From IMG/VR virus record IMGVR_UViG_3300042514_000542, positions 142,591-206,590 of that record: a DNA stretch of 64,000 bases, one strand, 5' to 3'. Below the pieces are notes generated by a model, which was not told the DNA's origin, did no database searches, and saw nothing but the letters and a program-made list of their open reading frames with translations. The position numbers were made by a program, and so were the translations under genes. This document shows, piece after piece, positions 45,558-62,309 of the stretch. The first letter of the stretch is position 1. Every line of letters begins with the position of its first letter.

Positions 45558-46303
45558 AGAATACAACATTTATTATTCACTTTAGACGAGATTGCGAGGA
45601 TAGAATTTTCAATTTAAAAACTATTTTAAAATATTTATATTCCAATAATCCTCTTGAAATAATTGTCATCAACGATGATAATGTTGTAGACCCAATCATG
45701 AAATGGGTAAAGACCGAGTATCCAACAATAAAATTGTTGTTTTGTGAAAATGAAGATGAATTTAAAAAATCTTATTGTTTTAATATGTCAGCATTACAAT
45801 CAACTGGCGATGTGTTATGTTTTTATGATGTTGATGTTTTAGTATCTCAAGCACAATTAGAAGAATCTCAAAATTTAATTTTGAGTGGACAAGCGGATCA
45901 CGTATACCCATTTAATGGAATTTTTATAGATGTTAAAAAGAAATTTTTTCCTATGTTTATTGACACATTTAATTTTGTCACCCTAAACAATGAGGTAACA
46001 GATACAACTTTAGGATTTTACAATGGAAATATAAATATTATATCTGATAAATCACCAGGAGGATGTAATTTAATATCAAAAAAAGCATTTCAAAAAATTG
46101 GGGGATATGATGAAAATTTCATTGGGTGGGGGTTTGAAGATACCGATTTCAGGGAAAGATCCAAGAAGAAAAATAATGTTCGGTATTTAGAGGGGGATAA
46201 GTATTTATATCATTTAGAACACATAACCCATTGTGATCAAGATAGATCGCAACAACCATATTATGGTAACAATTACAAACAATTTATACTAAATCAAAAA
46301 TGA
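45554..46303 (+). CDS. GT2/GT7-C galactosyltransferase-like protein
   Basis: FYDVD, GGYDENFIGWGFEDTDF, HLEH. Confidence 0.88.
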   Translation: MKNTTFIIHFRRDCEDRIFNLKTILKYLYSNNPLEIIVINDDNVVDPIMKWVKTEYPTIKLLFCENEDEFKKSYCFNMSALQSTGDVLCFYDVDVLVSQAQLEESQNLILSGQADHVYPFNGIFIDVKKKFFPMFIDTFNFVTLNNEVTDTTLGFYNGNINIISDKSPGGCNLISKKAFQKIGGYDENFIGWGFEDTDFRERSKKKNNVRYLEGDKYLYHLEHITHCDQDRSQQPYYGNNYKQFILNQK

Positions 46304-47571
46304 ACACTAAAACATATGTACAAATAGGTGCGAATGTAGGAAACGATGATTTTTATGCGAAAGTTAAAAACTTAACTGAACCATCGATAATACATTTGAT
46401 AGAACCGAACATTACCTTACATTCAGAACTACTTAAATGTTATGAAGAGTTAAGTAAATTGCATAATATTAGTGTTCATGGTTATGGAATTTCAAATAAA
46501 TCGGAACATGTATGTTTAAATCTATATGATAACTCTGGATTATCATCGATTATAAATAGGAAATCATATAGTCATAAAACAACAGCTATCGATATTGTAT
46601 GTAAGTCATTCGATGTTTTTTGCGAGGATAATCAAATATCACATATAGATTATTTATGTATAGATACGGAAGGATTGGATTATGAGATTTTAAATAGTAT
46701 TGACATAAACAGAATCAATATAGATGTTATTGAATTTGAAGAATGGCCGTATGAAAACGATGACGATAATGACAATTATAAGACTGGTGTGACATTTTTA
46801 CAATGTGAAGTTTTACCTAAATATAAAAATTATATCCTCGATAAACTTATTATCGGAGATATGCCAAGTTTTAGGTTAACAAAAAAGAAACTTTCTATTG
46901 CATTTACAACATTTAATAGTAGTCAATTCATTGTAGATGCATTATCTAATATTATATATAATGATATAGTTGATGAAATTATTATATCAGATGATAATTC
47001 GGATGATATAACAACTCTTAAAGAAATAATAAATAATTTCAACTGTCCAAAAATAAAATTATTCACACATGAATATCATTTAAATGCTAGTGTAAATAAA
47101 TATAAAGCTGTAATGTATTGTAAAAACGAATATGTTGCGTTAATAGATAGTGATAATGTTATTGATAATAGATACATTGATTTGATAGATTTTAAATATG
47201 ATGGTATACAAATGCCATCATATGCTAGTCCGAATTTCGATTATAGTAGTTTAGTTGGTGAGTATGACTTAGAGAGTATTAAATGGTTGATGAATAGTCC
47301 AAAACGAGATTTAACTTTACAATGTCTGAATACAGGGAATTATATTTTTCCAAAGTTTAGATATTTAGAAATAGCTAATAATGCATTAGAATTTAAATCA
47401 TATGGGGTTGATGTTTTTTATATATCTTGTTTATGGTTGCATTCTAATTATAATATAAAAATACTCAAGGGGTTAGAATATTTTCATAGATTAAGACCGG
47501 ATAGTTTGTGGATGAAAACCTCGAACGATAGTAATATAGTGATGGGGGAACTGATCAATAAATATTTATGA
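46300..47571 (+). CDS. FkbM methyltransferase-GT2 fusion
   Basis: N-terminal QIGANVG, IEPN, IDTEGLD; C-terminal LSIAFTTFN, ISDDNS, LIDSDN. Confidence 0.85.
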   Translation: MNTKTYVQIGANVGNDDFYAKVKNLTEPSIIHLIEPNITLHSELLKCYEELSKLHNISVHGYGISNKSEHVCLNLYDNSGLSSIINRKSYSHKTTAIDIVCKSFDVFCEDNQISHIDYLCIDTEGLDYEILNSIDINRINIDVIEFEEWPYENDDDNDNYKTGVTFLQCEVLPKYKNYILDKLIIGDMPSFRLTKKKLSIAFTTFNSSQFIVDALSNIIYNDIVDEIIISDDNSDDITTLKEIINNFNCPKIKLFTHEYHLNASVNKYKAVMYCKNEYVALIDSDNVIDNRYIDLIDFKYDGIQMPSYASPNFDYSSLVGEYDLESIKWLMNSPKRDLTLQCLNTGNYIFPKFRYLEIANNALEFKSYGVDVFYISCLWLHSNYNIKILKGLEYFHRLRPDSLWMKTSNDSNIVMGELINKYL

Positions 47572-47622
47572 ATAAACAATTAACCATCGGTACAATATTG
47601 GGTTTTAGAAAGAAAATATAAT

Positions 47623-48237
47623 ATGTTAATAGACTTCAATATATTAAAAGATAAGTATGGTATCACCACACATGGAGTGATACATGTTGGTATGCATAAA
47701 GCAGAGGAATATCCAATTTATAAAAACTGTGGGGTGGAAGAAATTATTTTTGTAGAGGCTAACCGAGATTTGGCGCATGGGTGGGTGAATGATGATCCTC
47801 ATTGTCATGTAGTCCATGCTGCGGTTTCAGATAAAGAAGAAATTATTAAATTCCACATCACCAATAATGGTGAAAGTTCCTCAATTTTAGAGTTGGGTGA
47901 TCATGCTAAGATATATCCACATATTGTAAATGTTGATACTGTTGAAATGAAGACCACCACATTAGATACGATTATTGAAAGGGTTGGTGTTTATAAGTTC
48001 GTATGGAATGTTTTAAATTTGGACATTCAGGGAGCAGAACTCAAGGCTATGAAGGGGCTAACCAATTGGGATAGTATTGAAGCCGTCTTCACTGAAGTAA
48101 ACTATAGAGAGATGTATAAGGGGTGTGGATTGGAACCGGAAGTTACCAAGTTTTTGGAGGATAAGGGATTTGAAAAGGTTGAAGAAGATGATACTGGATG
48201 TGGGTGGGGGGACGCACTATATATTAAAAAGAAATGA
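47623..48237 (+). CDS. FkbM family methyltransferase
   Basis: IHVGMHKAEE, VEAN, SSSIL, LDIQGAEL, WGDALY. Confidence 0.9.
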   Translation: MLIDFNILKDKYGITTHGVIHVGMHKAEEYPIYKNCGVEEIIFVEANRDLAHGWVNDDPHCHVVHAAVSDKEEIIKFHITNNGESSSILELGDHAKIYPHIVNVDTVEMKTTTLDTIIERVGVYKFVWNVLNLDIQGAELKAMKGLTNWDSIEAVFTEVNYREMYKGCGLEPEVTKFLEDKGFEKVEEDDTGCGWGDALYIKKK

Positions 48238-48992
48238 AAAATAAATGTTACGTTGATGTTAGTGGCGGTATTGGAAATCAGCTATTTAAGGTGGCTAATG
48301 GATATGCTTATAGCCAAAGGTATAATTTAGAGTTGGTTATAGATCCAACTAATTGGACAGCATCTCAAGGAACTAGTCCAATTCTATACCAATCCAATAT
48401 ATTTAAAAATTTTAACATTATCCCTAGAGGTGAAACTACAGAAATTCATGAAATATCCTTTAATTTTATGGAACTACCGAAATATGATTGGTCATATGGT
48501 GATATATCTCTACATGGTGGTTTTCAATCTCTGAAATATTTTGAAGATTATAAGGATGAGTTTATCAGTCTACTATGTTTACCGAAGGTAGATACATCAT
48601 TTATATCATCGGATGCTAATATAGCGTTTCATATTAGATTTGGTGATTATCAACATTATCCCAAAATATTTGGAGATATTACTAACTATTTCCATAAACA
48701 ATTTGAGAAGTTTTCTCCAGATTTTCAGATTAATGTATTTTCGGATTCTCCAGAATTAGTATTGAATAAATTCCGAAACTATAAATTTAATCTAATAAAA
48801 ACATCATCCGAGTTGAATGACTTGACTTTACTTTCTCTACATGATAGGATAGTTTGTAGTAACTCGACATTCTCTTGGTGGGCATCATTACTGGGTGCGA
48901 AAAAAGAATTGATTATCGTACCCGATAAATGGTTATTAGATCGAGATTGTAAAGATATATATTACGAAGGAATGATAAAAAATGAGTTTTAA
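48234..48992 (+). CDS. GT11 alpha-1,2-fucosyltransferase-like protein
   Basis: GGIGNQLF, FQSLKYF, HIRFGDY, FSD, NSTFSWW. Confidence 0.9.
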   Translation: MKNKCYVDVSGGIGNQLFKVANGYAYSQRYNLELVIDPTNWTASQGTSPILYQSNIFKNFNIIPRGETTEIHEISFNFMELPKYDWSYGDISLHGGFQSLKYFEDYKDEFISLLCLPKVDTSFISSDANIAFHIRFGDYQHYPKIFGDITNYFHKQFEKFSPDFQINVFSDSPELVLNKFRNYKFNLIKTSSELNDLTLLSLHDRIVCSNSTFSWWASLLGAKKELIIVPDKWLLDRDCKDIYYEGMIKNEF

Positions 48993-49329
48993 AGCATCGA
49001 ACTACCTAATTTTCGACCAGTCTAAAAACGAACTGGATAATGAATTACTTGAGGAATTTAATCCTTGGATGACAACCAAAACATTCTCATTTTATAATGA
49101 TGGGGAATTCATTCATTATATCAATGATTTTTTGAATGGTAATACCAACATCTTCAAAACTAAAGAAGAACAATTTAAATATTATGAGAATGTCATTCCC
49201 AGACAGAAATTTAAAAGAATAACTTATATTAAGAAATCTAAAACCGAAAAAGTCGAAGAGTATCCAATTCCAGAATTTTACTCTAGGCGCGAGATCGACT
49301 TATTTGAAAATATAAATATCATCACATGA
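48982..49329 (+). CDS. gp62: Clamp-loader small subunit (gp62-like)
   Basis: FNPWMTTKTFSF...IN..LN...EQFKYY..VIPRQKFKRITYIKK...YSRRE resembles the gp62 pattern. Confidence 0.6.
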   Translation: MSFKASNYLIFDQSKNELDNELLEEFNPWMTTKTFSFYNDGEFIHYINDFLNGNTNIFKTKEEQFKYYENVIPRQKFKRITYIKKSKTEKVEEYPIPEFYSRREIDLFENINIIT

Positions 49330-50003
49330 TAACTCTAATTACACCAACTGGCGGAAGACCTAAATCATTTGCATTGCTAGAAAAATATATGAGTAGGCAG
49401 TCAATGCCTTTCGATCAATGGATCGTAGTTGACGATTTTGAAACACCAACTCCATGTAATTTAGGACAAATGGTTATTCGTAGGCAACCCTTTTGGAAAC
49501 CTGGTGAAATGACCTTACCTTTAAATATATTAACCGCACTACCATGGGTTAGAGGGGAATATATATTGATCGTTGAGGATGATGACTGGTATAATCCTGA
49601 TTATATTAGAATAATGGTTGACCGATTGCAAAATTATGATCTAGTTGGTGGGGGTATTGCCCACTATTATAATGTGTCAACATTTCGTCATATAATACAC
49701 GGAAATACTCTAAATGCTAGTTTATGTGAAACCGGATTTAGACGAAGTGTTATGGATTCTATCGAGTCATGTATTCAATCTCACATCAATGAAATGTATG
49801 TTGATGGATATATATGGGATTTACCATTGAATAAATTAGTGTTCAATGACTCGGTTAATTGTATTGGTATAAAAGGTATGCCGGGTAGAGGGGGGCTTGG
49901 TCATGGACATCTAATTGATTTTGGATATCTAGACTCAACACCCTTCGATACATTACAAAAATGGATTGGGGATGATGTCAAATATTATAAAGATTTGCGA
50001 TGA
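49326..50003 (+). CDS. GT2-like glycosyltransferase
   Basis: ITLITPTGGRP, WIVVDD, IVEDDDWY. Confidence 0.85.
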   Translation: MITLITPTGGRPKSFALLEKYMSRQSMPFDQWIVVDDFETPTPCNLGQMVIRRQPFWKPGEMTLPLNILTALPWVRGEYILIVEDDDWYNPDYIRIMVDRLQNYDLVGGGIAHYYNVSTFRHIIHGNTLNASLCETGFRRSVMDSIESCIQSHINEMYVDGYIWDLPLNKLVFNDSVNCIGIKGMPGRGGLGHGHLIDFGYLDSTPFDTLQKWIGDDVKYYKDLR

Positions 50004-50018
50004 TAGTTTACGTAACTA

Positions 50019-50774
50019 TTATCTTTTTTGTAAAAAATCTAGTAGTAATTGATTGTAATCAATATTCCATTTCGGAGTTAGTGTAATATCTCCGGTGGGT
50101 ATCTTTCCTTTTATTCTTAGTTCTTCTATATGTCTTGAGTGCCTGACTATAATACTCTCTCTATCTGCTGTGTCTGCACCTTGACCAGACATATGATAAC
50201 TTCTATCAGCCCACAAATACATCCAAGAAACCTCCTCATCTGGAGGCTCTGCGAGAACCACCCTACATTGATATTCATTCTTTAGTTTTACGACAAATGA
50301 CATATCATATCCAGCATTTTCTAATTCATGTTTACCTGATTTTTCCCATATATTTTTAGTATAAACAATACCAGAATTACCCAAACTATGGATCGCATCA
50401 ACCTTTTTATAATTTACGGCTGCACCCTTTTGCCAATGTAATAAATCATATCCAGGAAAATATTTATTGATATTTTCCAAATGGTTTGGTAGTGCGATAT
50501 CATCATCGTCCCAAACCGCTATCGTGTCATATTTACAGTTATCGACCGCAAAATTCTCCTTTTCACCAATAGTTTCGAATGTTCTATTAAGATTAATTAT
50601 TTTAACATTTGGATGGTCGAAATATAATTTTTGCTCTGGGTAATCATTCACGATTACCATCTCTCGCTCACCATCATATTCCTGATTTAAAAAGCTGAAT
50701 AAAGATTCCTCAAGTAAGTCCACTCTACCGTATGTAATACACTTACATGAAATAGGTATTTTATCATTCATCAT
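50019..50774 (-). CDS. GT2 glycosyltransferase (late promoter)
   Basis: CITYGR, FLNQEY, IVND, WDDDD; TAAATA 8 nt before MMNDK. Confidence 0.88.
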   Translation of the reverse strand: MMNDKIPISCKCITYGRVDLLEESLFSFLNQEYDGEREMVIVNDYPEQKLYFDHPNVKIINLNRTFETIGEKENFAVDNCKYDTIAVWDDDDIALPNHLENINKYFPGYDLLHWQKGAAVNYKKVDAIHSLGNSGIVYTKNIWEKSGKHELENAGYDMSFVVKLKNEYQCRVVLAEPPDEEVSWMYLWADRSYHMSGQGADTADRESIIVRHSRHIEELRIKGKIPTGDITLTPKWNIDYNQLLLDFLQKR

Positions 50775-50871
50775 ATCGGAGATATTTACTCGTAACAATA
50801 ATTAATCAATCTAAAATCTCTTTATTAAATCTAGTATATTGACATATAAATAAACCAAATTAAATACCACT

Positions 50872-52293: not shown

Positions 52294-53907
52294 ATGACAA
52301 ACCTCATACTCAATTTCCCTGATGGATACTCTCCATCTAATCCACAGGTCGAGATATTAAAATCAATAGAGAGACACATCCAAAATGGTGTGAAATATAT
52401 AGTGGTGAATGCCCCCACCGGATCTGGAAAATCATTTATTCCAAAGACCATAGCAAACAGCGTAAATGGTGCATCGGATTATTTCAAACAAGTTGTTGAC
52501 GATTATAGTATTTTTTCTGACACTGGTGAGGATTTGATAGCGGATGAAGACCCATTTGGTGTATATGCTCTAACTATCACCAAAACCCTTCAAGATCAAT
52601 ATAAGAATACTTTTAATGATACTGGTATACTTAAGGGTCAAAGTAATTATCGGTGCGCTATTGACGATAGTATGACTGTCGATATTGCACCATGCATCTA
52701 CGTTAAAGGGTTGAAAAATGATTGTTGGAAGGCTAATAAATGCCCATATTACAACTCTAGAAATGAAATGCTTAAGAGTAATTTCTCATCACTTAACTAT
52801 AGTATGTTTTTCAGTTTACCAGATCATTTAAAGAAGCGAAAGATAATCGTTTGCGATGAAGGATCTGAACTAGAGGAACAACTTGTCGGTCAATTTTCTT
52901 GCGAAATTGACATTCCATTCCTAGTCAAGACTGGAACCAATACCTCTTCATTCCCATCCCAAGAAACACCAACCAAAGTCCTAACATGGTTGAATGAGCT
53001 ACTATTATCTCTGAATTCAAATATAGATGATTATAAACAATATCTAAAGGATCATAAGGGTTCTACGGATTTCTTTAAAAAATCCAGTGAATATACAAGG
53101 TTGCTAAACCTACAAGGAAGTATTCAAATTTTAATATTAACATTCTACGACAGTGAATATATTATAGAACGCGAGGAGAAGAACATAAAATTCACACCTT
53201 TGAAAGTTGATAAACTTTCTCAATATATTTTTAATCACGCTGATCATGTGATCATCATGTCTGCCACAATTATCGACCATAAAAGTTTCTGTAAAGGTCT
53301 GGGTATTCCAAAATATGAATATATTGAGGTTGATACAGAGTTCGATCATAGTAAGGGACCAATCCATATCATGGTTAAACAGAAATTGAATTTTAATAAC
53401 CTTAAAGAAATGTTACCGACATTAGCTAAACAGGTTAGAGGTATTCTTGAAGAACATAAAGACGATAAAGGTATTATTCACACACATACACAATATATTG
53501 CAGATTATATTAGGGATTATGTGAAATCTGATCGTCTTTTATGTAGGGAGACTGGAGTAAAAAATGAGGAAATATTAGACCTACATGAGAGATCTAAAGA
53601 GCCTACAGTATTGGTTTCTCCTAGCATGACTTATGGTGTTGACCTCAAGGGTGATCTAGCTAAGTTCCAAATACTTTTAAAAGCACCTTGGCTACCGACA
53701 AAAGAAAAACGTGTTGAGAAGATGATGAAGCTTGACAAACAATGGTATTCGAATAAGATGCTATGCACACTAGTTCAAGCTTGTGGTAGGGGTCTTAGAT
53801 CGTCCGATGACGAGTGTATCACTTACATTTTAGATGGATCGATATTTGATGTCGTGGTGAGGAACAAAAGTAAATTACCCAAATATTTTATAGACCGCTT
53901 TGAATAA
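52294..53907 (+). CDS. DinG/XPD-family helicase
   Basis: APTGSGKS, LKGQSNYRC, four-Cys cluster, VCDEGS, MSAT, GVD, QACGRGLRSSDD. Confidence 0.88.
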   Translation: MTNLILNFPDGYSPSNPQVEILKSIERHIQNGVKYIVVNAPTGSGKSFIPKTIANSVNGASDYFKQVVDDYSIFSDTGEDLIADEDPFGVYALTITKTLQDQYKNTFNDTGILKGQSNYRCAIDDSMTVDIAPCIYVKGLKNDCWKANKCPYYNSRNEMLKSNFSSLNYSMFFSLPDHLKKRKIIVCDEGSELEEQLVGQFSCEIDIPFLVKTGTNTSSFPSQETPTKVLTWLNELLLSLNSNIDDYKQYLKDHKGSTDFFKKSSEYTRLLNLQGSIQILILTFYDSEYIIEREEKNIKFTPLKVDKLSQYIFNHADHVIIMSATIIDHKSFCKGLGIPKYEYIEVDTEFDHSKGPIHIMVKQKLNFNNLKEMLPTLAKQVRGILEEHKDDKGIIHTHTQYIADYIRDYVKSDRLLCRETGVKNEEILDLHERSKEPTVLVSPSMTYGVDLKGDLAKFQILLKAPWLPTKEKRVEKMMKLDKQWYSNKMLCTLVQACGRGLRSSDDECITYILDGSIFDVVVRNKSKLPKYFIDRFE

Positions 53908-55138
53908 TATGAATTTAAAAAAATATAAACGAATTAGGAAATTAGTTAACGGTTTAATGACTACAACATACGTTCCCAAAAAAGAAAATAGAAATATGAC
54001 AACCTTAAAAAAATATTTAAATCACTTTATGTGGTATGATTTATCTAACGATGATCTTTTAAACATCATTCCATCACCAGTATTCGATATCGAGTATCCT
54101 TCAAATTTTGAAACACATTTTGGTAAAATTCCAACGGTATTTTTAAAAATAGATGATAAAATTCTACCTTTGGAAAACTTCAACAAATTTCAAAAATATC
54201 TATTATCGCAAGGATTTGATTTAATGGAATGCGGGTATGAGACTTTCAAATATATTCATTTTGAAAGAAAAATACTTATTAGTGGTGATGCCACTGATAT
54301 GTCTATCGATCTTGAAGAGGATGAAGAGGATGACTATCCCAGAGGAAATCGATCAATCGAATCCGAAACTATTTATATAAATTTACTCCCAACTCTTGAA
54401 AATAAAGAGTTTATCGAAAAAGTGATGAAAAAAATCCATTCATTTCTTATTGATGTTTCGACTCAAATCGATAAGTTCTACATGATTGCTCAGGGTCAAA
54501 ATGGACTGTTTACACAGAAGACTAAATTTAAATCTATACCTGTGGAAGATGATAGATTCGATTTATTCTATGGTAGAGAATTTCCACATGAAAAAATGCA
54601 AAGGTTTGTATGGGATAAAACCGATAACCTTATGCTACTTCACGGAGATCCCGGCACAGGTAAGTCTAATTATATTAAACATCTTATAACTAGTTCTAAG
54701 AAAAAAGTTATATATATCCCACCATCTATGCTTAGTGTCATCTCCGATCCGGGATTTGTAACATTTATGATGAGTAACAAGGATAGTATTCTTCTGATTG
54801 AAGATGCCGAAGAAGTATTATCAGTGGATAGAAATTCGGCAACCAATAACCTATTAGGATTAACTGACGGATTTTTAAAAGATGCGTTGGGGCTGAAGGT
54901 TATTGCCACATTCAATTGTGATATCGGTAAAATTGACCCTGCTTTGAAAAGAAAAGGTCGTATGTATTTTGAATACAAGTTTGATAAATTAAGTGTTGAT
55001 GAGTGTAGAACATTGGCTACTCACTTAAAACTAGATAAAGAGATTAGAGATCCTATGACACTTGCGGAATTTTTTAGTGTTGAGGAAAACACAATAGAGG
55101 ATTCGTTTAAAGAACGTTTTATAGGGTTTGCGACATGA
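53900..55138 (+). CDS. AAA+ ATPase
   Basis: LLHGDPGTGKS, LLIEDAE, TFN, IDPALKRKGR, IGF tail. Confidence 0.88.
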   Translation: MNNMNLKKYKRIRKLVNGLMTTTYVPKKENRNMTTLKKYLNHFMWYDLSNDDLLNIIPSPVFDIEYPSNFETHFGKIPTVFLKIDDKILPLENFNKFQKYLLSQGFDLMECGYETFKYIHFERKILISGDATDMSIDLEEDEEDDYPRGNRSIESETIYINLLPTLENKEFIEKVMKKIHSFLIDVSTQIDKFYMIAQGQNGLFTQKTKFKSIPVEDDRFDLFYGREFPHEKMQRFVWDKTDNLMLLHGDPGTGKSNYIKHLITSSKKKVIYIPPSMLSVISDPGFVTFMMSNKDSILLIEDAEEVLSVDRNSATNNLLGLTDGFLKDALGLKVIATFNCDIGKIDPALKRKGRMYFEYKFDKLSVDECRTLATHLKLDKEIRDPMTLAEFFSVEENTIEDSFKERFIGFAT

Positions 55139-55157: not shown

Positions 55158-56252
55158 GTGAAAACATATTCCTATTTCCGAGAAACCCTTAACACCCTCA
55201 CACAATTCACCGCAGCGTTCGATGATTGTGTAGTGTGGAGGTATGATAAAAATTTCGAGAAGAAGGAAAAAATCAATGTTCGATATGTATTTGGTCCAAA
55301 AAATAGGGTATTGTACGACATAGTTAATCAGTCTAAGAATATCACTCTTCCTGTTATTTCAATTGAGCAGACTAACGTTAAAAGAGATTCTAGTCGAATC
55401 CAATTTAAGGATCAGAAGATAACCCGAAGAAATCTTAATGATGATAGTATTTCAAGGGTTCCAAGTCCCATACCAGTCACCATGGATCTTAATGTATCCA
55501 TGGTAGCTAATTATAAAGAGGATATTGATCAAATAGCTGCAAATATTCTACAGTGGTTTAATCCATATATAATTATATCTTGTAAGATTCCAGAAGAATT
55601 TGGAATGGATTTTATAGATGAAATCAGAACCGAGGCTACTTGGGGTGGTTCAGTGGATTACGAAAACCCAACGAATATCGCGGCATCGGACAAATATAAA
55701 ATCGTTGGGAATACCACTTTTAATGTTAAGGGTTGGATATTCCCAGCATTAGAAACACCCCAAGCACCTATTTACGTTGTAAATACAAATTTTGTATCGG
55801 TATCGAGCGGTTCCATACTAAATGGATATGATGATTTCTGGTCATTATCCGCTAATAATACGACGGATTCGATCTTAATCTCCGCATTCCCAGAATTTAC
55901 AAATTATTTTATAAATGGTCGCCCATATGATGAGTTAATTTTAAACGATATCAATGATAAAACATTTACATTTTACGGGAAAAGATTTGATTTTAATAAC
56001 ACTTGGTATCTAAGTTCAAATGTAGTAATACCCGAATTAGTATATACCGAAATAGACACCGCTAAATTTCCTACCATATCTGCTTATAAATTACCTGATA
56101 GTGTTATCACCACTGTAAATGATAATATAGTATCAATTAGTTTAAGTTCGGGGTATTTGAATTTGAGTGGCGGATATGTTTTTATCACAGCCAATGATGC
56201 GGGATGGGGTCTGTCAACTGGAATTTTTATAAACTCTGATAATTTATTTTAA
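55158..56252 (+). CDS. gp15: Tail completion/sheath stabiliser (gp15-like) with a C-terminal extension
   Basis: F...FDD, YVFGPK, ITLP.IS, DQI...IL.WFNP, FNVKGWIFP. Confidence 0.8.
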   Translation: MKTYSYFRETLNTLTQFTAAFDDCVVWRYDKNFEKKEKINVRYVFGPKNRVLYDIVNQSKNITLPVISIEQTNVKRDSSRIQFKDQKITRRNLNDDSISRVPSPIPVTMDLNVSMVANYKEDIDQIAANILQWFNPYIIISCKIPEEFGMDFIDEIRTEATWGGSVDYENPTNIAASDKYKIVGNTTFNVKGWIFPALETPQAPIYVVNTNFVSVSSGSILNGYDDFWSLSANNTTDSILISAFPEFTNYFINGRPYDELILNDINDKTFTFYGKRFDFNNTWYLSSNVVIPELVYTEIDTAKFPTISAYKLPDSVITTVNDNIVSISLSSGYLNLSGGYVFITANDAGWGLSTGIFINSDNLF

Positions 56253-56312
56253 ATGGGATTATAATTTTCTACAATGGTCAGAAAATTATATATAATTAAG
56301 TTAAATAATTAT

Positions 56313-57416
56313 ATGGCAATAGATTTAGGCGATAATCCAGTGGGAATCCCCCCCACAGCAGGTGAGGCGACCCAAATTAGAACGGTTTTAGGGTTGGGTA
56401 ATGTTAACAATACATCTGATCTAGATAAACCGATCTCGACAGCCACACTATCGGCACTTAATTTAAAAGAGACTCCCGCTGGAGCAGCCGCGCAAATCGC
56501 AGCATCCGCCCTTACTGACGCACAAGTGGGCAACCAAGTCGGTAACGAGCTTGTGGCTACTTTTTCAGCGTTGGCCGCTGTATCCACACTAAATCCCGGC
56601 TGTCTGGTGTTGGCCACTTCTCGTCCGAATGCTGCTAACGTCATAATCAGGACATCAACTGGCTACGCTCGACCTATTCTCGCTGCCACTGGAGCATTGT
56701 CCACTCAGGTTGGGACAGGGGTTGTTGGCGCACAGTTAACAATCCCCATTGCTGCTGGTGCTGCCATGCGTGCAATGTCGGTAATCAGTGTTGCGAGCGG
56801 TGGCTCTGTCCGTAGTGGTAACATCACTGACATTAATATTTCTGATGTGGGCTTACACAGTATGCCCACATCGCACTTAACAGCTTTGACTGCGCTGACT
56901 GTTATTAACAGTAGGTTGCCCAGCTTTGACGGGTCTGGGCTTACTTCGCTCACAATCCTAGCCTTAAACAGCAACAATCAACTCCGCTCCTTTACCAAGG
57001 GAACAGGATTAGAATCACTGTTGAGCCTAACGTTAAATTCTAATAGACTGACAACGTTTTCGGGAGTGGGACTTAGCGTATTAAGAAATCTCTTTTTAAA
57101 TAATAACCAACTCACAACTTTTGACGCTACTGGATTAGGTGAGCTTAGGACATTAAACGTTTCAAACAACACAACCCTGAATAGCTTTGTTTTGTCCAGT
57201 GTCCCAACCCTAGTTTCTCTTCGTAATGAGGATATTTCGACTTTTGCAGTGGTTGCAAATGGTTGCTCTTTAAGTGCGCAAGCAATCAATGACTTCTTCA
57301 CTGCACTCCCGCCAGCAACAAACGGAGCAGCAACTCTAGTCTTCAACGGAAACCCAGGAAGTGCAACTGCCAATGCATCCATTGCCACCTCCAAAGGTTA
57401 CACTGTATCCCTCTAA
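56313..57416 (+). CDS. Fibre-anchored leucine-rich-repeat protein
   Basis: LGLGNVNNTSDLDKPISTA fibre repeat; at least four LxxLxLxxN repeats; elevated GC; TAAATA 5 nt before MAIDLG. Confidence 0.7.
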   Translation: MAIDLGDNPVGIPPTAGEATQIRTVLGLGNVNNTSDLDKPISTATLSALNLKETPAGAAAQIAASALTDAQVGNQVGNELVATFSALAAVSTLNPGCLVLATSRPNAANVIIRTSTGYARPILAATGALSTQVGTGVVGAQLTIPIAAGAAMRAMSVISVASGGSVRSGNITDINISDVGLHSMPTSHLTALTALTVINSRLPSFDGSGLTSLTILALNSNNQLRSFTKGTGLESLLSLTLNSNRLTTFSGVGLSVLRNLFLNNNQLTTFDATGLGELRTLNVSNNTTLNSFVLSSVPTLVSLRNEDISTFAVVANGCSLSAQAINDFFTALPPATNGAATLVFNGNPGSATANASIATSKGYTVSL

Positions 57417-57427
57417 AATAAATCATC

Positions 57428-58327
57428 ATGCAAACTAAAATCACCATCGCGCTTGGAGCGTCACACGCCGCAGAGGTATCCAGACTCTCCACCTCCATTC
57501 CTGAGTTGCTGATCGTAGATGAGGAAAACCCTCTTTATGAAGAGCGACATGATGATGTCACGGTCAATGCGCTACTCACCAAGTCTGGCTTTGGCAAGTT
57601 CCTACCAGAAGACAGAGATGGAGCAGTTTTCCTTTGCGACACCGACCTCCAGCCTGTGGGTGGCGGAAACCCATTCGACACCTTCCCCGATATGGGTGAT
57701 GCCGACATCGCCTTTGTTGCATATCCCGGACGATTCTTTTTCCCACCTACCGAAAGCTACCAAGCAGCGAGCTACGCTGTCCTTGGGAAAAAGCTCAACT
57801 CAGGAATGGTCTGGTTCAAGAATCACGAAACAGCAAAAGCTATCTCTGCTGCATGGGAGGCAAAATATCTAGAGGATATTTCCGAGGGTGGTGCTATGGC
57901 TGACATGACTCATAAAAATGATGAGGTATCGCTGATGGCGGTGCTTGTTTCTGGCGACTGGAACTACCACTGGCTGGAGCAAGTCTGGAATAACCAATGG
58001 GAACCTAGCGAGAACGACATCATTCGTCACTCGCACGATGTCCCGACTACATCCGCGCCACAAAGCGAACCAACGCCTGTCCCTGAATCCCTCGCCAACT
58101 GGCGCGTTAAGGCGGTTCTTGACATACAGGGACTTACATCAACTGTGGATGCTGCCATAGATGCTATGGTAGACAGTAATGAAAAAATTATTATTTCAAG
58201 AGCATGGAACGGTAATGGTGATGTCCTTCGTCACTCCCCAACCGTTAATTCTTTCATGGCTATTCTCGGCCTCACCGATGCTCAGGTGGATGATATGTTC
58301 CGTTTGGCTGATACTTTCAATCCGTAA
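57428..58327 (+). CDS. GT-A (GT8-like) domain fused to a tail-fibre-assembly-like C-terminal domain
   Basis: FLCDTD, LNSGMVWF, DEVSL, WN, IRH; then VPESLANWRVKAVL...W...LGLTDAQVDDMFRLA. Confidence 0.6.
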   Translation: MQTKITIALGASHAAEVSRLSTSIPELLIVDEENPLYEERHDDVTVNALLTKSGFGKFLPEDRDGAVFLCDTDLQPVGGGNPFDTFPDMGDADIAFVAYPGRFFFPPTESYQAASYAVLGKKLNSGMVWFKNHETAKAISAAWEAKYLEDISEGGAMADMTHKNDEVSLMAVLVSGDWNYHWLEQVWNNQWEPSENDIIRHSHDVPTTSAPQSEPTPVPESLANWRVKAVLDIQGLTSTVDAAIDAMVDSNEKIIISRAWNGNGDVLRHSPTVNSFMAILGLTDAQVDDMFRLADTFNP

Positions 58328-58491: not shown

Positions 58492-60318
58492 ATGGCAGGT
58501 ATTCAGAATAATCCTAATAATAGGAGTAATTTATCCAGAGACGGTAAATCTGGAATGTATGATAGGTCGATGCAGACTTATCTCAAAAACCGTGTTCCAT
58601 ATAATTATAGTGTTTTAGATTCGGATGAATCCAAAAATACAAAATATAAATATTTCCAAAAAGTTGGAATGCGTAGACCAGAGGCTCTTGCTAAGAACTC
58701 TGTAACTCTCAATAATCCATATAATAACACAGCATTCTCTGCAATCGAAAGAGATAAGACTTTCGGTGATATTATGTATGCAAGCGCATCTGAAGATAAA
58801 CCGGGACGCTTGAGGGATTATAGATCTATGGCAGCATTTTCCGAAATTGCTGATGCTCTAGATGAAATTTGTGATGAGACAATTAATCCAGATGAAAATG
58901 ATGAGATTGTCCTTTTAAAATTTAAAAATACGGATTTGGAGTCGGATAAGAAAAGCGAAATCCAAGAAGAATGGTATAGGTATATTGAATATTACGACTT
59001 ACATAATAATGGATGGCAATACTTTAGACAATTCTTAACTGAGGGTGAATTGTTTTTTGAACAAATAATTCATGATGAATTTACCAATGAGGGTGTTTTA
59101 GGCATTATTAATATGCCAGCAGACCTCATTGATCCGGTATATTCAAATATTCAAAATATGTTGGTTAAGGGATTCCTATATCAAAAACCAATCTTCGATC
59201 CCAATGATCCCAAGAAAGTGGAAAGATATGAACCAATTCCTTTAGAGGAAAACCAAGTAGTTTATATTAATAATTCTGCATATAATGACACAAAGGATTT
59301 CATTATACCATTTATAGAAAATTGTCGTAGAGCTTATAGACAATTATCGATGATCGAAGATGCTGTAGTTATTCATAGAATGGTTCATGCACCTCTAAGG
59401 TTTGTATTTAATGTTGACGTTGGTACACTTCCTGTACCACAAGCAGAATCATACTTGAGAAAATTACAAGCACAGTATTGGTCATCTAAAACATTCGACT
59501 CTGACCAAGGGGATATTGTTAAAAAATATAGCCCACAATCAACATTGGATAGTTATTGGTTCGCCAAGAGACAAGGACAGGAACCGACCACAGTTAGTGA
59601 AATCGGTGGAACTCCGGGTCTTGGAGAGCTTCATGACTTGATGTTCTTCATCAAAAAACTTTACAGATCGCTTAAGGTTCCGACTTCAAGATTAGACCCC
59701 GAAGATTCGTTTCGTGATGGGACTGATATTCTTAGAGAAGAATTAAAGTTTGCCACAATGATCATGAGACAACAGAAGAAATTTGCTTCTGGCCTCAAGA
59801 GAGGATTTATAACACACCTCAAACTTCGTCATATGTTTGAGCAATATGATTTAACAGAACAAAATATTAATGTTGTATTCAATGCACCATCAAATTTCTA
59901 CGATCTTAGAAATAATCAGAAGATGGAACTTAAGGTTAATTCTTATAATAATCTTATGTCAACTCAAAAGGTTTCTGATACATATGCCAAGAAAAAAGTT
60001 CTTGGTTGGAAAGACAAAGATATTCTAGCAGATCGTGAATTGCGTAGAAAAGACGCAGAATTAGATTGGGAATTACAACAGATTATGGCAATGGGTCCAA
60101 GCTGGAAAGAGCAGTTATTACAACAAGCCCAAGGTGGCGCACCCGAAGCTGGTGATGATCTAGGTGGTATGGGCGGCGGAATGGGTGCTGGCGGTGCTGG
60201 AGGTTTACCACCTTCGTTCGGTGGTGGTGAAGCAGCAATTGGTGGTGATGAAACACTTCCACCTAATGCTGGTGTTGCGCCAGAAATGCCTATGGTTCCA
60301 GAAGAACCTCCAGCTTAA
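58492..60318 (+). CDS. gp20: Portal protein (gp20-like)
   Basis: YRSMA, ALDEI, QLSMIEDAVVIHR..APLR.VFNVDVG, LYRSLKVPTSRL, REELKF. Confidence 0.96.
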   Translation: MAGIQNNPNNRSNLSRDGKSGMYDRSMQTYLKNRVPYNYSVLDSDESKNTKYKYFQKVGMRRPEALAKNSVTLNNPYNNTAFSAIERDKTFGDIMYASASEDKPGRLRDYRSMAAFSEIADALDEICDETINPDENDEIVLLKFKNTDLESDKKSEIQEEWYRYIEYYDLHNNGWQYFRQFLTEGELFFEQIIHDEFTNEGVLGIINMPADLIDPVYSNIQNMLVKGFLYQKPIFDPNDPKKVERYEPIPLEENQVVYINNSAYNDTKDFIIPFIENCRRAYRQLSMIEDAVVIHRMVHAPLRFVFNVDVGTLPVPQAESYLRKLQAQYWSSKTFDSDQGDIVKKYSPQSTLDSYWFAKRQGQEPTTVSEIGGTPGLGELHDLMFFIKKLYRSLKVPTSRLDPEDSFRDGTDILREELKFATMIMRQQKKFASGLKRGFITHLKLRHMFEQYDLTEQNINVVFNAPSNFYDLRNNQKMELKVNSYNNLMSTQKVSDTYAKKKVLGWKDKDILADRELRRKDAELDWELQQIMAMGPSWKEQLLQQAQGGAPEAGDDLGGMGGGMGAGGAGGLPPSFGGGEAAIGGDETLPPNAGVAPEMPMVPEEPPA

Positions 60319-60636: not shown

Positions 60637-61788
60637 ATGAGTTCACTTTGCACAATTACGCCAGTTTCGGCGTTTATGTCTACAAATCTAAGTTCGAAAA
60701 TTGACTGTTTTCAAGAATTGGGTGCTAGAATTCTTAGAATGCTTGGACACCCTATGATCAATGTTGAGCTACATCCTGATCAATTATATGACTCTATTTC
60801 AATGGCGTGTGAGTTTTTCACAAAGTATGCAGGACACACTAAGGAGTATTTGGTATTCAACTCTGATCTCTACGAAAGAGATAAAGGTATTAGATTGGAC
60901 TATTTATATACAGTCTCGAATACTGGGTTTACATTATCTCAAAAACTGAATGATCAAACTATTCCAAATCCAGACTTTGAATTGAAATTTAGAGAGAATT
61001 TATATGTGTCGTTATCAGACATCTCATATAATCATTTTTTAACTTCATCTGCATTATCTGCGTCGATTCCAACTGATGGTATCTCAACAATGCAGATATT
61101 AGATGAAAGTTCTTTTGCTCAATTAACCGCTTTTGATGCTAATTTGAGAAACATGTTTCGCATTTCACCTATGAAACCCTTCAATGTTCAATGTGAACAG
61201 GTGGAAAATGTGAGAACTATTAATAACATGTTTGATTATGATATTATGGATTATCGTAAAGTTATAGATGTTATTGATTTTGAAGAGGGTTCAAGTTCTG
61301 GTATTAGTCAATTATTTTCGATGGAACAGACCTTAGCTCAACAAACTTTCTATAGTTATGCTATGGGTAACTTTGGATTCGATTTGCTGTCTTGGCATAC
61401 TGTTAAAGATTGGCAAGATACCCGTGAGAAACTTTTGGCGACTCGTAGAGATATACATTTTGATAATAGAACGCAGTATTTGAAGTTTTATCCACAACCT
61501 AAAGATACGTCATCATTTGTGGGGGTGTTAGAATGCTATGTGGAAAGACCATTGAGAGATATTATTAAAGAAAAATGGGTTCTAGATTATTCTATCGCAC
61601 TATCTAAAGTTATGTGGGGAAGGATTCTAACAAAAATTAATGGTGTGACTATGCTTGGTGGCGGGACTCTAAATGGTGCTGAAATTTTAGCAGAAGGAAA
61701 TGCTGATAAAGAACGTCTTGAAACGATGCTGATTGAAGGCACGGGTGGGACAGCTTCGTATGAACCTATCATGATGTTCATAAGGTAA
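60637..61788 (+). CDS. gp13: Neck protein (gp13-like)
   Basis: ILRMLGHPMINVEL..DQ; WVLDY..A..K..WG..L.K..G..MLGGGTLNG. Confidence 0.9.
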   Translation: MSSLCTITPVSAFMSTNLSSKIDCFQELGARILRMLGHPMINVELHPDQLYDSISMACEFFTKYAGHTKEYLVFNSDLYERDKGIRLDYLYTVSNTGFTLSQKLNDQTIPNPDFELKFRENLYVSLSDISYNHFLTSSALSASIPTDGISTMQILDESSFAQLTAFDANLRNMFRISPMKPFNVQCEQVENVRTINNMFDYDIMDYRKVIDVIDFEEGSSSGISQLFSMEQTLAQQTFYSYAMGNFGFDLLSWHTVKDWQDTREKLLATRRDIHFDNRTQYLKFYPQPKDTSSFVGVLECYVERPLRDIIKEKWVLDYSIALSKVMWGRILTKINGVTMLGGGTLNGAEILAEGNADKERLETMLIEGTGGTASYEPIMMFIR

Positions 61789-61793
61789 ATTTT

Positions 61794-62309
61794 ATGATAT
61801 ACCCAAAACAAATTCCCAAATTTGTAAAAGATGTTCAATATCAGGAATTACATCCGAAAGTTGGAAAATATTTATATAGATATAAGACATTAGATGATAT
61901 CGAGTTGGTATTTCATAATTCATTAATACCACAAAATCAAACTATAACATTTAGTGATGAACAAGGTCGAATCTGGTTGACCATCACACACAAATCTATA
62001 ATAATATCCAAGAATTATGCTTGGAATGGATGTTCACCAAAAAGATGGTGGCTGGTTTGGTGGGGAACTCCCGATTTTGAGGAAACCCTTATTGCGTCAT
62101 TATTTCATGACGCATTAGTTCAGTTTGTATACACTGAACATTTTCCCTTGTCGAGATATATATGCGACAACATATTCAAAAATATATTATATATGAAAAA
62201 ATTTAAATTTGTAGATATATATTATATTGGAGTTAGAGTAGGTAGTGAAGTATTACCAATCAATAAATATGTTGGGAAATCCAACTTGACAACACTATCT
62301 CAAGACTAA
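61794..62309 (+). CDS. DUF1353-like protein
   Basis: YAWNGCS, ASLFHDAL, YYIGVR. Confidence 0.6.
   Translation: MIYPKQIPKFVKDVQYQELHPKVGKYLYRYKTLDDIELVFHNSLIPQNQTITFSDEQGRIWLTITHKSIIISKNYAWNGCSPKRWWLVWWGTPDFEETLIASLFHDALVQFVYTEHFPLSRYICDNIFKNILYMKKFKFVDIYYIGVRVGSEVLPINKYVGKSNLTTLSQD

What the first reader, a model, noticed from the sequence alone, without database searches (positions are those of the whole stretch)
57428..58327. Glycosyltransferase fused to a tail-fibre-assembly-like domain, directly downstream of a fibre gene
Seen: about 200 aa with GT-A/GT8-like motifs (CDTD, NSG, DE, WN, H), then a P/T/S linker, then VPESL..W..KAVL...LGLTDAQVDDMFRLA. From family knowledge, that C-terminal pattern is typical of the small ORFs that follow phage tail fibres. 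Inference: the chaperone-like module could deliver a GT to its cognate fibre (dedicated fibre glycosylation), or a virion-borne GT fold could bind or modify host glycan. I do not recognise this architecture as described.
Basis: partly seen in the sequence, partly recalled or inferred. Interest (0 to 1): 0.75.

Follow-up and report, generated by a model that had tools for sequence, protein, structure and literature searches.

The report
Fibre-linked glycosyltransferase with docking module
A freshwater T4-like phage carries an imported two-gene cassette: a leucine-rich-repeat tail-fibre-like protein, then a sugar-transferring enzyme fused to a small helical module that other phages encode right after their tail-fibre genes, which suggests (untested) that the phage decorates its own host-recognition fibre.

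Summary
Window 57428-58327 is one intact 299-aa ORF with three parts. Residues 1-203 are a high-confidence retaining GT-A / GT8-like glycosyltransferase fold with DxD, NSG, DE, WN and H..H motifs. Residues 204-222 are a P/T/S linker. Residues 223-299 form a compact five-helix module.

The fusion is neither unique nor a chimera. Full-length homologues occur in other contigs. Contigs from independent lake metagenomes bridge the domain joint and both gene borders.

The module is not a canonical tail-fibre-assembly domain: the Caudo_TAP profile comparison gave probability 0.2%, and no solved structure matches. It belongs to an unnamed phage family, phrog_6034/14311. In seven cultured phages its members lie zero to two genes downstream of a tail-fibre or tail gene. 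Elsewhere the module is fused to GT2/GT92-like and sulfotransferase-like enzymes.

A new point: every GT8-like gene examined, fused or not, directly follows a protein ending in a conserved ~60-aa "cap" (..LP..T..NPG.AT..sIAT.KGYTV). The reverse search gave the same pairing.

The fibre gene and the enzyme gene form a 46-51% GC island in a 34% GC phage.

Best reading: an imported cassette of a receptor-binding protein plus a dedicated enzyme that modifies it. The catalysis and its target are inferred, not shown.

The parts
56313..57416 (+). LRR fibre-like protein. The longest ORF starts at 56274 (380 aa); the probable start is ATG 56313 (367 aa). It is the first gene of the imported cassette.
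   Evidence: ORF. P0163 is 367 aa and 100% identical. Pfam LRR_4 and LRR_8 score 26.7 and 25 bits against a cut-off of 27. PHROG tail-fibre and minor-tail hits fall on aa 28-76. It is 42% identical (E 7e-52) to the LRR protein upstream of the sulfotransferase fusion in L003.
56355..56501 (+). N-terminal tail-fibre-type motif (LGLGNVNNTSDLDKPIS...), the presumed virion-anchoring part.
   Evidence: phrog_13892 minor tail protein E 1.2e-8; phrog_35419 and phrog_24919 tail fiber protein.
56826..57215 (+). Leucine-rich repeats.
   Evidence: Pfam LRR_8 and LRR_4 stretches at aa 225-304; alignment with the L003 LRR protein.
57216..57413 (+). Conserved C-terminal 'cap' (..FFTALP..T..NPGSAT..SIATSKGYTV), the element that always precedes the enzyme gene.
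   Evidence: The cap HMM matches aa 315-379 (E 1.4e-29) and is the only match in the whole 206-kb genome. Consensus over 17 sequences.
57428..58327 (+). The finding: a 299-aa fusion protein, starting 11 nt after the stop of the fibre-like gene.
57428..58036 (+). Retaining GT-A / GT8-like glycosyltransferase domain (aa 1-203).
   Evidence: AF2 model; Foldseek PDB; ESM Atlas; hhalign against WaaJ/WaaO; weak PF03407 hits in 5 of 25 homologues.
57638..57646 (+). DxD motif (D71-T-D73), the presumed metal and NDP-sugar binding site.
   Evidence: D71 and D73 are invariant in 25 homologues. They align with D130-A-D132 of WaaJ.
57797..57805 (+). N124-S-G126 motif.
   Evidence: N124 and G126 are conserved in at least 90% of homologues. 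The motif aligns with NSG 180-182 of WaaJ.
58037..58093 (+). P/T/S-rich flexible linker (aa 204-222), also the recombination joint between modules.
   Evidence: pLDDT falls to 66-81 here. P0001 and P0002 are 95.5% identical before it and 33% identical after it.
58094..58324 (+). Five-helix C-terminal module (aa 223-299) of family phrog_6034/14311.
56313..58327 (.). GC-rich island (46-51% GC against 34-36% in the flanks) that coincides with the two genes, interpreted as a horizontally acquired cassette.
   Evidence: blastn shows 79% nt identity over 57276-58323 and 78% over 56489-56943 to L001, a ~59% GC phage contig.
55158..56252 (+). Left flank: gp15-like tail sheath stabiliser (native phage backbone).
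   Evidence: PF16724 E 6.9e-17.
58492..60318 (+). Right flank: gp20-like portal protein (native phage backbone).
   Evidence: PF07230 E 3.3e-89. The same gp15-[cassette]-portal slot is seen in L006.

Best explanation
The two genes 56313-57416 and 57428-58327 are a horizontally acquired host-recognition cassette. It sits between the gp15 and portal genes of a 206.6-kb freshwater T4-like phage.

**Shown**
1. The first gene encodes a fibre-like LRR protein that ends in a conserved ~60-aa cap.
2. The second encodes a cytoplasmic retaining GT-A (GT8-like) enzyme with an intact motif set. A flexible linker joins it to a five-helix module.
3. The GT8-like gene, with or without the module, always directly follows a cap-bearing protein, and cap-bearing proteins are followed by it.
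4. The five-helix module is the conserved C-terminal part of small phage proteins encoded just after tail-fibre genes. It is shuffled between different N-terminal domains. These include a second glycosyltransferase family and sulfotransferase-like enzymes.

**Inferred**
- During late infection the enzyme uses a host or phage nucleotide sugar to glycosylate the fibre protein, most likely on or near its cap. The cap carries an invariant Thr and a near-invariant Tyr.
- The enzyme domain supplies specificity for the cap. It occupies the position that the variable, fibre-binding N-domain holds in modular fibre chaperones.
- The five-helix module supplies a generic function shared with the small post-fibre proteins, either docking to the fibre or assembly machinery, or oligomerisation.
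- The large cluster of soluble glycosyltransferases and methyltransferases 5.5 kb upstream could extend the glycan.
For: **Fold and motifs.**

**Cytoplasmic, intact protein.** One open frame without stops.

**Cap-enzyme pairing.**
- Starting from GT homologues: the window, L001, L014 (twice, cap-GT-cap-GT), L015, L016, L017 and L019 all show it.
- The cap HMM finds exactly one ORF in the whole genome and in each such locus, always the upstream neighbour.
- Starting from cap proteins P0169, P0171 and P0167: each is followed after a 4-nt gap by a 216-217-aa protein with weak PF03407 hits.
- The same cap-LRR protein precedes the sulfotransferase-module fusion P0005.

**Fibre nature of the cap proteins.** PHROG tail-fibre hits; a BppL_N receptor-binding-protein N-domain in L015; an N-terminus shared with a collagen-like fibre in L017.

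**The module is fibre-associated.**
- In Palo, Curvibacter P26059A, Pseudomonas HHBS14_1 and phiM9 it lies directly after the tail-fibre or tail-protein gene.
- In S2B it lies two genes after the fibre gene. In Acica it lies after fibre-like genes and directly before the sheath gene.
- phiM9_137 and phiM9_138 were called predicted tail fiber assembly proteins in PMC4621102.
- BFVD and AFDB structure hits are always C-terminal, a few of them named tail-fiber-assembly-like.

**Module shuffling.**
- P0001 and P0002 are 95.5% identical in the N-domain and 33% in the module.
- The query module is 80-86% identical to that of proteins with unrelated N-domains.
- P0101 combines Glyco_tranf_2_4/GT92 with the module.
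- P0005 has a sulfotransferase-2-like N-domain.
- In the syntenic phage L006 the slot holds an LRR_5 protein, a separate Sulfotransfer_3 gene and a 168-aa module protein.

**Cassette moved as a unit.** GC island plus 78-79% nt identity to L001 across both genes.

**Precedent.**
- Modular fibre chaperones have a variable fibre-binding N-domain and a conserved C-domain (PMC9608196).
- Phage-encoded GTs glycosylate virion proteins in mycobacteriophages (Freeman 2023, known to me only from the reference list of PMC12801897).
- The PBCV-1 capsid GT A64R was among the fold hits.

**Glycan cluster.** Window 44054-50798.
Against: - No direct evidence exists of glycosylation, of enzyme-fibre binding, or that either protein is in the virion.
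- Gene adjacency is equally expected if the enzyme acts on the fibre's receptor rather than on the fibre.
- LRR proteins are not classical trimeric fibre tips, and the role of the cap is unknown.
- The five-helix module has no solved relative and is not homologous to Caudo_TAP, so its docking or assembly role rests on gene position only.
- Module type does not co-vary with fibre type. The same ~80% identical module follows cap-LRR, LRR_5 and collagen/LamG fibres. This fits a generic role but gives no evidence that it binds the fibre.
- The protein itself reaches no Pfam GT threshold.
- One locus (L018) has a truncated GT ORF without a cap neighbour.
- No T4-type late promoter motif lies near the cassette.
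Confidence: 0.45

Rival explanations
1. Receptor-editing partner. The enzyme modifies the host surface glycan that the neighbouring LRR fibre recognises, for example by acting on a cytoplasmic LPS, capsule or glycoprotein precursor. This would block superinfection or stop progeny from sticking to debris. It travels with the fibre because its specificity must match. The five-helix module only oligomerises or localises it.
For: The strict co-inheritance of fibre cap and enzyme is equally expected here. From my own knowledge, phages do place receptor-masking genes beside receptor-binding genes (T5 llp next to pb5) and carry O-antigen-modifying GTs. Authors usually interpret GT-rich aquatic phages as modifying the host surface (PMC12801897). 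The phage has many other GTs.
Against: The protein has no membrane segment or signal peptide, unlike the seroconverting Gtr systems (my knowledge). This reading does not explain why the enzyme is fused to a module whose other carriers sit right after fibre genes in phages that have no GT. A conserved cap is paired with the enzyme while the rest of the fibre varies from 147 to 783 aa. That points to the cap, not a receptor, as the constant partner.
Confidence: 0.22
2. Virion-borne accessory. The five-helix module anchors the protein to the fibre, and the GT fold is displayed at the fibre as a sugar-binding adhesin or extracellular glycan modifier.
For: Some fibre chaperones remain on the mature fibre tip (phage Mu Tfa; PMC10579305). 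GT-A folds bind sugars. The protein sits in the gene slot of tip-attached accessory proteins.
Against: NDP-sugar and PAPS donors are not available outside the cell. The module is also fused to sulfotransferase-like and GT2/92-like enzymes. That favours intracellular catalysis. The full catalytic motif set is conserved, including in the unfused 200-230-aa homologues that have no anchor.
Confidence: 0.1
3. The enzyme domain acts mainly as the specific, substrate-like binding half of a fibre chaperone, with catalysis secondary or lost. The protein would be a tail-fibre assembly factor that recruited a GT fold.
For: The architecture parallels Tfa/Pam3 gp25, with a variable N-domain that binds the fibre and a conserved C-domain. 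The gene occupies the chaperone slot.
Against: Invariant DxD, NSG, DE and WN across homologues of 25-80% identity argues for retained catalysis. Unfused GT copies pair with caps without any module.
Confidence: 0.1
4. The C-terminal module is an XRE-like helix-turn-helix DNA-binding domain, so the protein is a regulator-enzyme fusion unrelated to the fibre.
For: The weak structural matches are mostly HTH proteins: AcrIIA1 at Z 5.3, C.BclI and lambda cI. Two AFDB cluster hits carry automatic 'transcriptional regulator' names.
Against: These scores are below the tool's stated noise level for helical bundles. Foldseek E is 1 or more. Family members sit inside structural gene blocks after fibre genes in seven cultured phages. 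Pfam HTH models give only scattered hits with E 0.03 or more in 2 of 114 members.
Confidence: 0.03

Closest known systems
Retaining GT-A glycosyltransferases of the GT8 / Nucleotid_trans type (LgtC, WaaJ/WaaO, glycogenin, XXYLT1, LARGE1 xylosyltransferase domain, UGGT catalytic domain, GlyE)
   Same: Fold, order of secondary structure, and the DxD, NSG, DE..L, WN and C-terminal His motifs. Several of these enzymes act on proteins or protein-bound glycans.
   Different: Only about 10-14% identity to any solved member. No Pfam threshold hit. It is much shorter (about 200 aa) and carries a C-terminal five-helix phage module. Donor and acceptor are unknown.
Modular tail-fibre assembly chaperones (phage Mu Tfa, PDB 5YVQ; cyanophage Pam3 gp25, PDB 7YPX; Pfam Caudo_TAP PF02413)
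   Same: The gene lies immediately downstream of the fibre gene. The architecture is a variable N-terminal part plus a conserved C-terminal helical part. Modules are exchanged between phages together with fibre genes.
   Different: No sequence or profile relationship (hhalign probability 0.2%; no Pfam hit). No structural match to the solved chaperones. The module is a compact five-helix globule, not the elongated trimerising helices described for gp25. Here the N-terminal part is an enzyme.
Virus-encoded glycosylation of virion proteins (mycobacteriophage capsid and tail-tube glycosylation, Freeman et al. 2023; chlorovirus PBCV-1 A64R)
   Same: A virus-encoded soluble GT-A enzyme is encoded among structural genes. 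A64R was a fold hit. The genome has an additional set of GTs and methyltransferases.
   Different: Those systems target the capsid or tail tube, and I know of no dedicated docking module in them. Here the partner would be a receptor-binding fibre, and nothing has been shown experimentally.
phrog_6034 / phrog_14311 small proteins (e.g. Sinorhizobium phiM9_137/138, Rhizobium Palo_050, Curvibacter P26059A_0029, Pseudomonas HHBS14_1 CDS0061, Acidovorax Acica_19)
   Same: The same C-terminal module (profile E 1e-13 to 1e-26; TM 0.72-0.87). The same position after a fibre gene.
   Different: Those proteins are 104-166 aa with small non-enzymatic N-terminal parts. All are annotated hypothetical or, by prediction only, as tail fiber assembly proteins.

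Membership tests
GT-A fold glycosyltransferase, GT8 / Nucleotid_trans-like | Single Rossmann-like alpha/beta/alpha GT-A fold | tested here: met
   AF2 pLDDT 92.5. Foldseek PDB top hits are all GT-A retaining enzymes, probability 1.00, E 6e-9 to 1e-5. Atlas TM 0.73-0.79 to GT8 clusters.
GT-A fold glycosyltransferase, GT8 / Nucleotid_trans-like | DxD metal/NDP-sugar motif and the NSG motif in register | tested here: met
   D71 and D73 are invariant; N124 and G126 are at least 90% conserved. They align to DAD130-132 and NSG180-182 of WaaJ.
GT-A fold glycosyltransferase, GT8 / Nucleotid_trans-like | Match to the curated family model (PF01501 or PF03407) above the gathering score | tested here: not met
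   No Pfam hit for the protein at E 0.1 or below. Only 5 of 25 homologues hit PF03407, best E 0.0012. hhalign to WaaJ/WaaO gives probability 69% over 84 columns.
GT-A fold glycosyltransferase, GT8 / Nucleotid_trans-like | Transfer of a sugar from a nucleotide sugar with retention of configuration | not testable with these tools
   Needs an enzyme assay.
Canonical tail fibre assembly protein (Caudo_TAP, PF02413; TfaMu / Pam3 gp25 type) | Sequence or profile similarity to PF02413 | tested here: not met
   hhalign of the module profile A3 against five E. coli K-12 Caudo_TAP domains (A8) gives probability 0.19%. No Pfam hit in the query, in 114 family members or in 8 cultured-phage members.
Canonical tail fibre assembly protein (Caudo_TAP, PF02413; TfaMu / Pam3 gp25 type) | Structural similarity to solved fibre chaperones | tested here: not met
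   Foldseek PDB best E is 1.0. VIA-align wide best Z is 5.3, to an HTH protein. The C-domain of TfaMu itself is unsolved, so this test is incomplete.
Canonical tail fibre assembly protein (Caudo_TAP, PF02413; TfaMu / Pam3 gp25 type) | Gene immediately downstream of its cognate fibre gene | tested here: met
   Window, related loci and seven cultured phages.
Canonical tail fibre assembly protein (Caudo_TAP, PF02413; TfaMu / Pam3 gp25 type) | Variable N-terminal part plus conserved C-terminal part | tested here: met
Canonical tail fibre assembly protein (Caudo_TAP, PF02413; TfaMu / Pam3 gp25 type) | Binds the fibre and is needed for its folding or oligomerisation | not testable with these tools
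   No multimer prediction or experiment was available.
phrog_6034 / phrog_14311 (unnamed phage family) | Match to the family profile | tested here: met
   E 8.4e-15 and 3.2e-7 on aa 205-296. 113 of 114 related small proteins also match.
Phage virion-protein glycosylation system | Phage-encoded glycosyltransferase genetically linked to a structural protein gene | tested here: met
   Conserved cap-protein/GT pair, found from both search directions.
Phage virion-protein glycosylation system | The structural protein carries a glycan added by that enzyme | not testable with these tools
   Needs mass spectrometry or glycan staining.
XRE-type helix-turn-helix domain | Significant structural or profile match to HTH families | tested here: not met
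   Z is 5.3 or less, inside the tool's stated noise range for helical domains. Foldseek probability is 0.28 or less. Pfam HTH/sigma-70 region 4 hits have E 0.03 or more in 2 of 114 members.

The most novel reading that the evidence does not exclude
Aquatic phages may have a previously unrecognised class of fibre-directed post-translational modification enzymes. In this reading, interchangeable catalytic heads are recruited to receptor-binding proteins through a shared five-helix docking module and/or a conserved C-terminal cap on the fibre. The heads seen here are GT8-like, GT2/GT92-like and sulfotransferase-like. The phage would then write glycan or sulfate marks on its own host-recognition apparatus and trade fibre and enzyme as one cassette.
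Probability: 0.3. Interest if true: 0.8.

Novelty: new variant of a known kind. Interest (0 to 1): 0.62.

Why it matters
Host range of phages is usually explained by the amino-acid sequence of receptor-binding proteins. If fibres are also enzymatically decorated by a dedicated, co-transferred enzyme, then host recognition, particle stability or stickiness could depend on a layer that sequence-based host prediction and fibre engineering do not see.

The work also gives three concrete results:
- It gives a first functional context to a widespread unnamed phage family (phrog_6034/14311; 655 cluster representatives matched the whole query at E 0.001 or below, most of the best 150 through the module alone).
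- It defines a simple sequence tag, the cap ending in IAT.KGYTV, that predicts the neighbouring enzyme.
- It suggests an alternative reading for some of the many glycosyltransferases of aquatic phages, which are normally assumed to act on host surfaces or DNA.

The system can be tested directly by co-expressing the two genes.

Tried and rejected
**Searches that found nothing or failed**
- tblastn of the query and of P0010 against 50,697 GenBank phage records found no match.
- Profile searches of PDB sequences with the GT alignment and with the module alignment found nothing meaningful.
- With narrower alignments, IMG/VR gave only 1 locus for the module and 7 for the GT domain.
- The paper by Freeman et al. 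2023 is not held.

**Ideas tested and not supported**
- One of 114 module proteins hits phrog_188 'tail fiber assembly protein'. Scanning the ten longest members did not identify which one.
- The claim in PMC4621102 that phiM9_137/138 resemble pfam02413 was not reproduced with the current Pfam.
- The T4 late-promoter motif TATAAATA is not enriched in the window and does not occur within the cassette or its intergenic borders (nearest: 54370 and 58645).
- psbA is absent, so there is no support for a cyanophage.
- Swiss-Prot structure search for the module found nothing.

**Readings considered and rejected**
- Assembly chimera: independent contigs and runs contradict it.
- Module as HTH regulator: the scores are at noise level and the gene context is structural.
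- My early assumption of a marine origin was wrong. The runs that hold the sequence are lake-water metagenomes.
Full report
**1. What is there**

The window is the last 64 kb of a 206,590-bp virus record rated 100% complete. It is found in lake-water metagenomes.

On the + strand the local gene order is as follows:

| Coordinates | Gene |
|---|---|
| 52294-53907 | helicase |
| 53900-55138 | AAA ATPase |
| 55158-56252 | gp15-like tail sheath stabiliser |
| 56274/56313-57416 | LRR protein |
| 57428-58327 | the 299-aa target |
| 58492-60318 | gp20-like portal |
| 60637-61788 | neck/head-tail adaptor-like protein (phrog_211) |
| 61794-62309 | DUF1353 protein |

The backbone is 33-36% GC. The LRR gene and the target gene form a 46-51% GC island whose edges coincide with the gene ends.

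**2. The N-terminal half is a glycosyltransferase fold**

- Twenty-five homologues keep K52, D71-x-D73, N124-S-G126, W143, D165-E166, W187-N188 and a C-terminal H..H.
- The AlphaFold2 model (mean pLDDT 92.5) shows an alpha/beta domain at residues 1-203, a low-confidence linker at 204-222, and five helices between residues 224 and 295.
- Foldseek against the PDB returns only retaining GT-A enzymes, all at probability 1.00. They are LARGE1, XXYLT1, BoGT6a, the UGGT catalytic domain, alpha-1,3-galactosyltransferase, GlyE and the chlorovirus capsid glycosyltransferase A64R.
- ESM Atlas agrees, with a feature score of 0.98 to viral PF03407 clusters and TM 0.73-0.79 to GT8 clusters.
- A profile comparison with E. 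coli WaaJ/WaaO puts DxD on DAD and NSG on NSG.
- The protein is too divergent for any Pfam model. Five of 25 homologues weakly hit PF03407.

I therefore call it GT8-like by fold and motifs. It is not a certified family member.

**3. The C-terminal module**

Modelled alone, it is a compact five-helix domain with pLDDT 94.

It has no significant relative among solved structures. The Foldseek best E is 1, and the VIA-align best Z of 5.3 is to an HTH protein, which is inside the noise range for helical domains. It has none in Swiss-Prot models either.

It is unrelated to the canonical tail-fibre-assembly domain Caudo_TAP, with hhalign probability 0.2%.

It is nevertheless a large phage family:
- It matches phrog_6034 and phrog_14311.
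- The whole query found 655 cluster representatives at E 0.001 or below. Most of the best 150 match only the module and are 125-170-aa proteins that carry it at their C-terminus.
- Predicted-structure libraries show the same fold, always C-terminal, in many uncharacterised phage and prophage proteins. A few are labelled tail-fiber-assembly-like or baseplate.

In cultured phages the family members lie zero to two genes after a tail-fibre or tail gene (profile E 1e-13 to 1e-26):

| Phage | Position of the module gene |
|---|---|
| Rhizobium phage Palo | directly after the tail fiber gene |
| Curvibacter phage P26059A | directly after the tail fiber gene |
| Pseudomonas phage HHBS14_1 | directly after the 'tail protein' gene |
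| Sinorhizobium phiM9 | two copies after a gp12-like fibre |
| Caulobacter phage S2B | two genes after the fibre gene |
| Acidovorax phage Acica | after fibre-like genes, directly before the sheath gene |
| Delftia PhiW-14 | in the baseplate/fibre block, but below the profile threshold; structure match only |

The phiM9 proteins were described as predicted tail fiber assembly proteins (PMC4621102). The Pfam similarity claimed there is not reproduced now.

The homology implied by 'Tfa-like' is not.

**4. The fusion is real and recurrent**

- Full-length homologues exist at 81, 66, 53 and 44% identity, and more at 30-40%. P0001 lies on 187-193-kb contigs from three assemblies and again follows an LRR protein.
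- About a third of the GT-family representatives among the best 150 matches carry the module. The rest are stand-alone proteins of 200-230 aa.
- Contigs from independent lake runs of other studies bridge the left island border, the fibre/enzyme boundary, the domain joint and the right border with 0-4 differences.

**5. Module shuffling**

- P0001 and P0002 are 95.5% identical over the enzyme domain but 33% over the module.
- Conversely, the query's module is 80-86% identical to modules attached to unrelated N-terminal parts.
- Those parts include sulfotransferase-2-like domains (P0005/6/12: weak Pfam hit; Atlas 0.96) and a Glyco_tranf_2_4/GT92 domain (P0101).
- In the syntenic T4-like phage L006 the same gp15-portal slot holds an LRR_5 protein, a separate Sulfotransfer_3 gene and a 168-aa module protein. 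That is the unfused counterpart of the fusion.

**6. A new regularity: the cap**

The protein directly upstream of every GT8-like gene I could inspect ends in a conserved ~60-aa segment. Its consensus is ..aLp..t....t....npg.at...sIaT.KGytV. The rest of that protein varies from 147 to 783 aa, and it may or may not contain LRRs.

- A cap HMM finds exactly one ORF in the whole 206-kb genome and one per such locus (two in L014, arranged cap-GT-cap-GT), always the upstream neighbour.
- Starting instead from cap proteins found by a database search, three of three look-ups show a 216-217-aa PF03407-like gene 4 nt downstream.
- The sulfotransferase-module fusion P0005 also follows a cap-LRR protein that is 42% identical to the window's.
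- Cap proteins carry fibre-type N-termini: PHROG tail-fibre hits, BppL_N, and an N-terminus shared with a collagen-like fibre.
- The one exception is L018, which has a truncated GT ORF.

**7. Origin**

The cassette is a GC island here, in L006 and in L015. It is not an island in the 56-59% GC contigs L001 and L003.

The window shares 78-79% nucleotide identity with L001 across both genes. The pair was therefore imported as a unit from a higher-GC phage lineage.

**8. Mechanism**

Sections 2-7 are shown. What follows is inferred.

- The enzyme has an intact catalytic motif set and no export signal, and it needs a nucleotide-sugar donor, so it should act inside the infected cell.
- The constant partner of the enzyme is the cap, not the rest of the fibre.
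- The module's other carriers are fibre-adjacent accessory proteins.
- The most economical model is a dedicated fibre-modifying enzyme. The catalytic domain recognises the cap. The five-helix module supplies a generic docking or oligomerisation function shared with the small post-fibre proteins. This mirrors the variable-N / conserved-C logic of fibre chaperones (PMC9608196).
- A cluster of at least seven soluble glycosyltransferases and two FkbM methyltransferases at 44054-50798, plus NDP-sugar epimerases elsewhere in the genome, could build or extend a glycan.

I put this model at about 0.45.

The main rival (0.22) is that the enzyme edits the host receptor glycan that the fibre recognises. 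That would explain the co-inheritance equally well but not the module. Display as a virion lectin, a chaperone with vestigial catalysis, and an HTH regulator are less likely.

**9. Novelty**

Each part belongs to a known kind: a GT-A enzyme, a post-fibre accessory protein, and phage-encoded virion glycosylation.

I found no description of the following in the searched literature:
- an enzyme fused to this module;
- the family of alternative enzyme heads;
- the cap-enzyme pairing.

The library is incomplete, so this is a new variant of a known kind, with a moderate chance of being a new class of fibre-directed modification systems.

Noticed in passing
window 44054-50798: Dense cluster of glycan-building genes: five or six GT2-like glycosyltransferases (one with Glyco_transf_7C), a GT11 (fucosyltransferase family), an FkbM methyltransferase-GT2 fusion and a second FkbM methyltransferase. 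The whole genome also has 2-3 NDP-sugar epimerases and no psbA.
   Followed up: partly
window 56174-56311: In the probable source run, two short contig variants cover the left border of the GC island. One is identical; the other has 8 substitutions and 2 indels, at similar depth. An independent run shows the divergent version. This suggests strain-level variation exactly at the cassette junction.
   Followed up: no
window 56274-56313: The longest ORF of the LRR gene starts at 56274 inside AT-rich phage-like sequence. A database protein identical to it starts at ATG 56313 (367 aa), where the GC island also begins. 56313 is therefore the likely true start.
   Followed up: partly
window 61794-62309: A DUF1353 protein (phrog_1158, 'tail assembly chaperone') lies near the cassette. 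DUF1353 genes also lie next to module genes in Caulobacter phage S2B (gp007c) and upstream in L001.
   Followed up: no
L014:3163-5660: Tandem duplication of the pair: cap protein (185 aa), GT (230 aa), cap protein (160 aa), GT (219 aa).
   Followed up: partly
L003:1-954 and L004:1-954: The sulfotransferase-module fusion sits in a different phage type. That phage encodes a giant polyvalent protein of about 6,600 aa (ddrB-ParB, Zeta toxin, helicase and ART-PolyVal domains) a few genes upstream.
   Followed up: no
L019:4643-5065: A 140-aa ORF two genes upstream of the cap protein ends in a threonine-rich tail (seven Thr, AAP, seven Thr). This mucin-like stretch could be an O-glycosylation site.
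   Followed up: no
L017:4120-4827 and L017:5905-6822: The cap protein and a downstream collagen-like fibre share about 45 N-terminal residues. This suggests alternative fibres that use one attachment site on the virion.
   Followed up: no
L013:4187-6152: The GT2_4/GT92-module fusion P0101 is preceded by a weak polysaccharide pyruvyl transferase-like protein and a 900-aa protein of unknown type, on a 211-kb contig.
   Followed up: no
L001:5300-5640: The LRR gene upstream of P0001 contains a run of unreadable bases (it translates as X), so its full length (783 aa in a sister contig) could not be read here.
   Followed up: no
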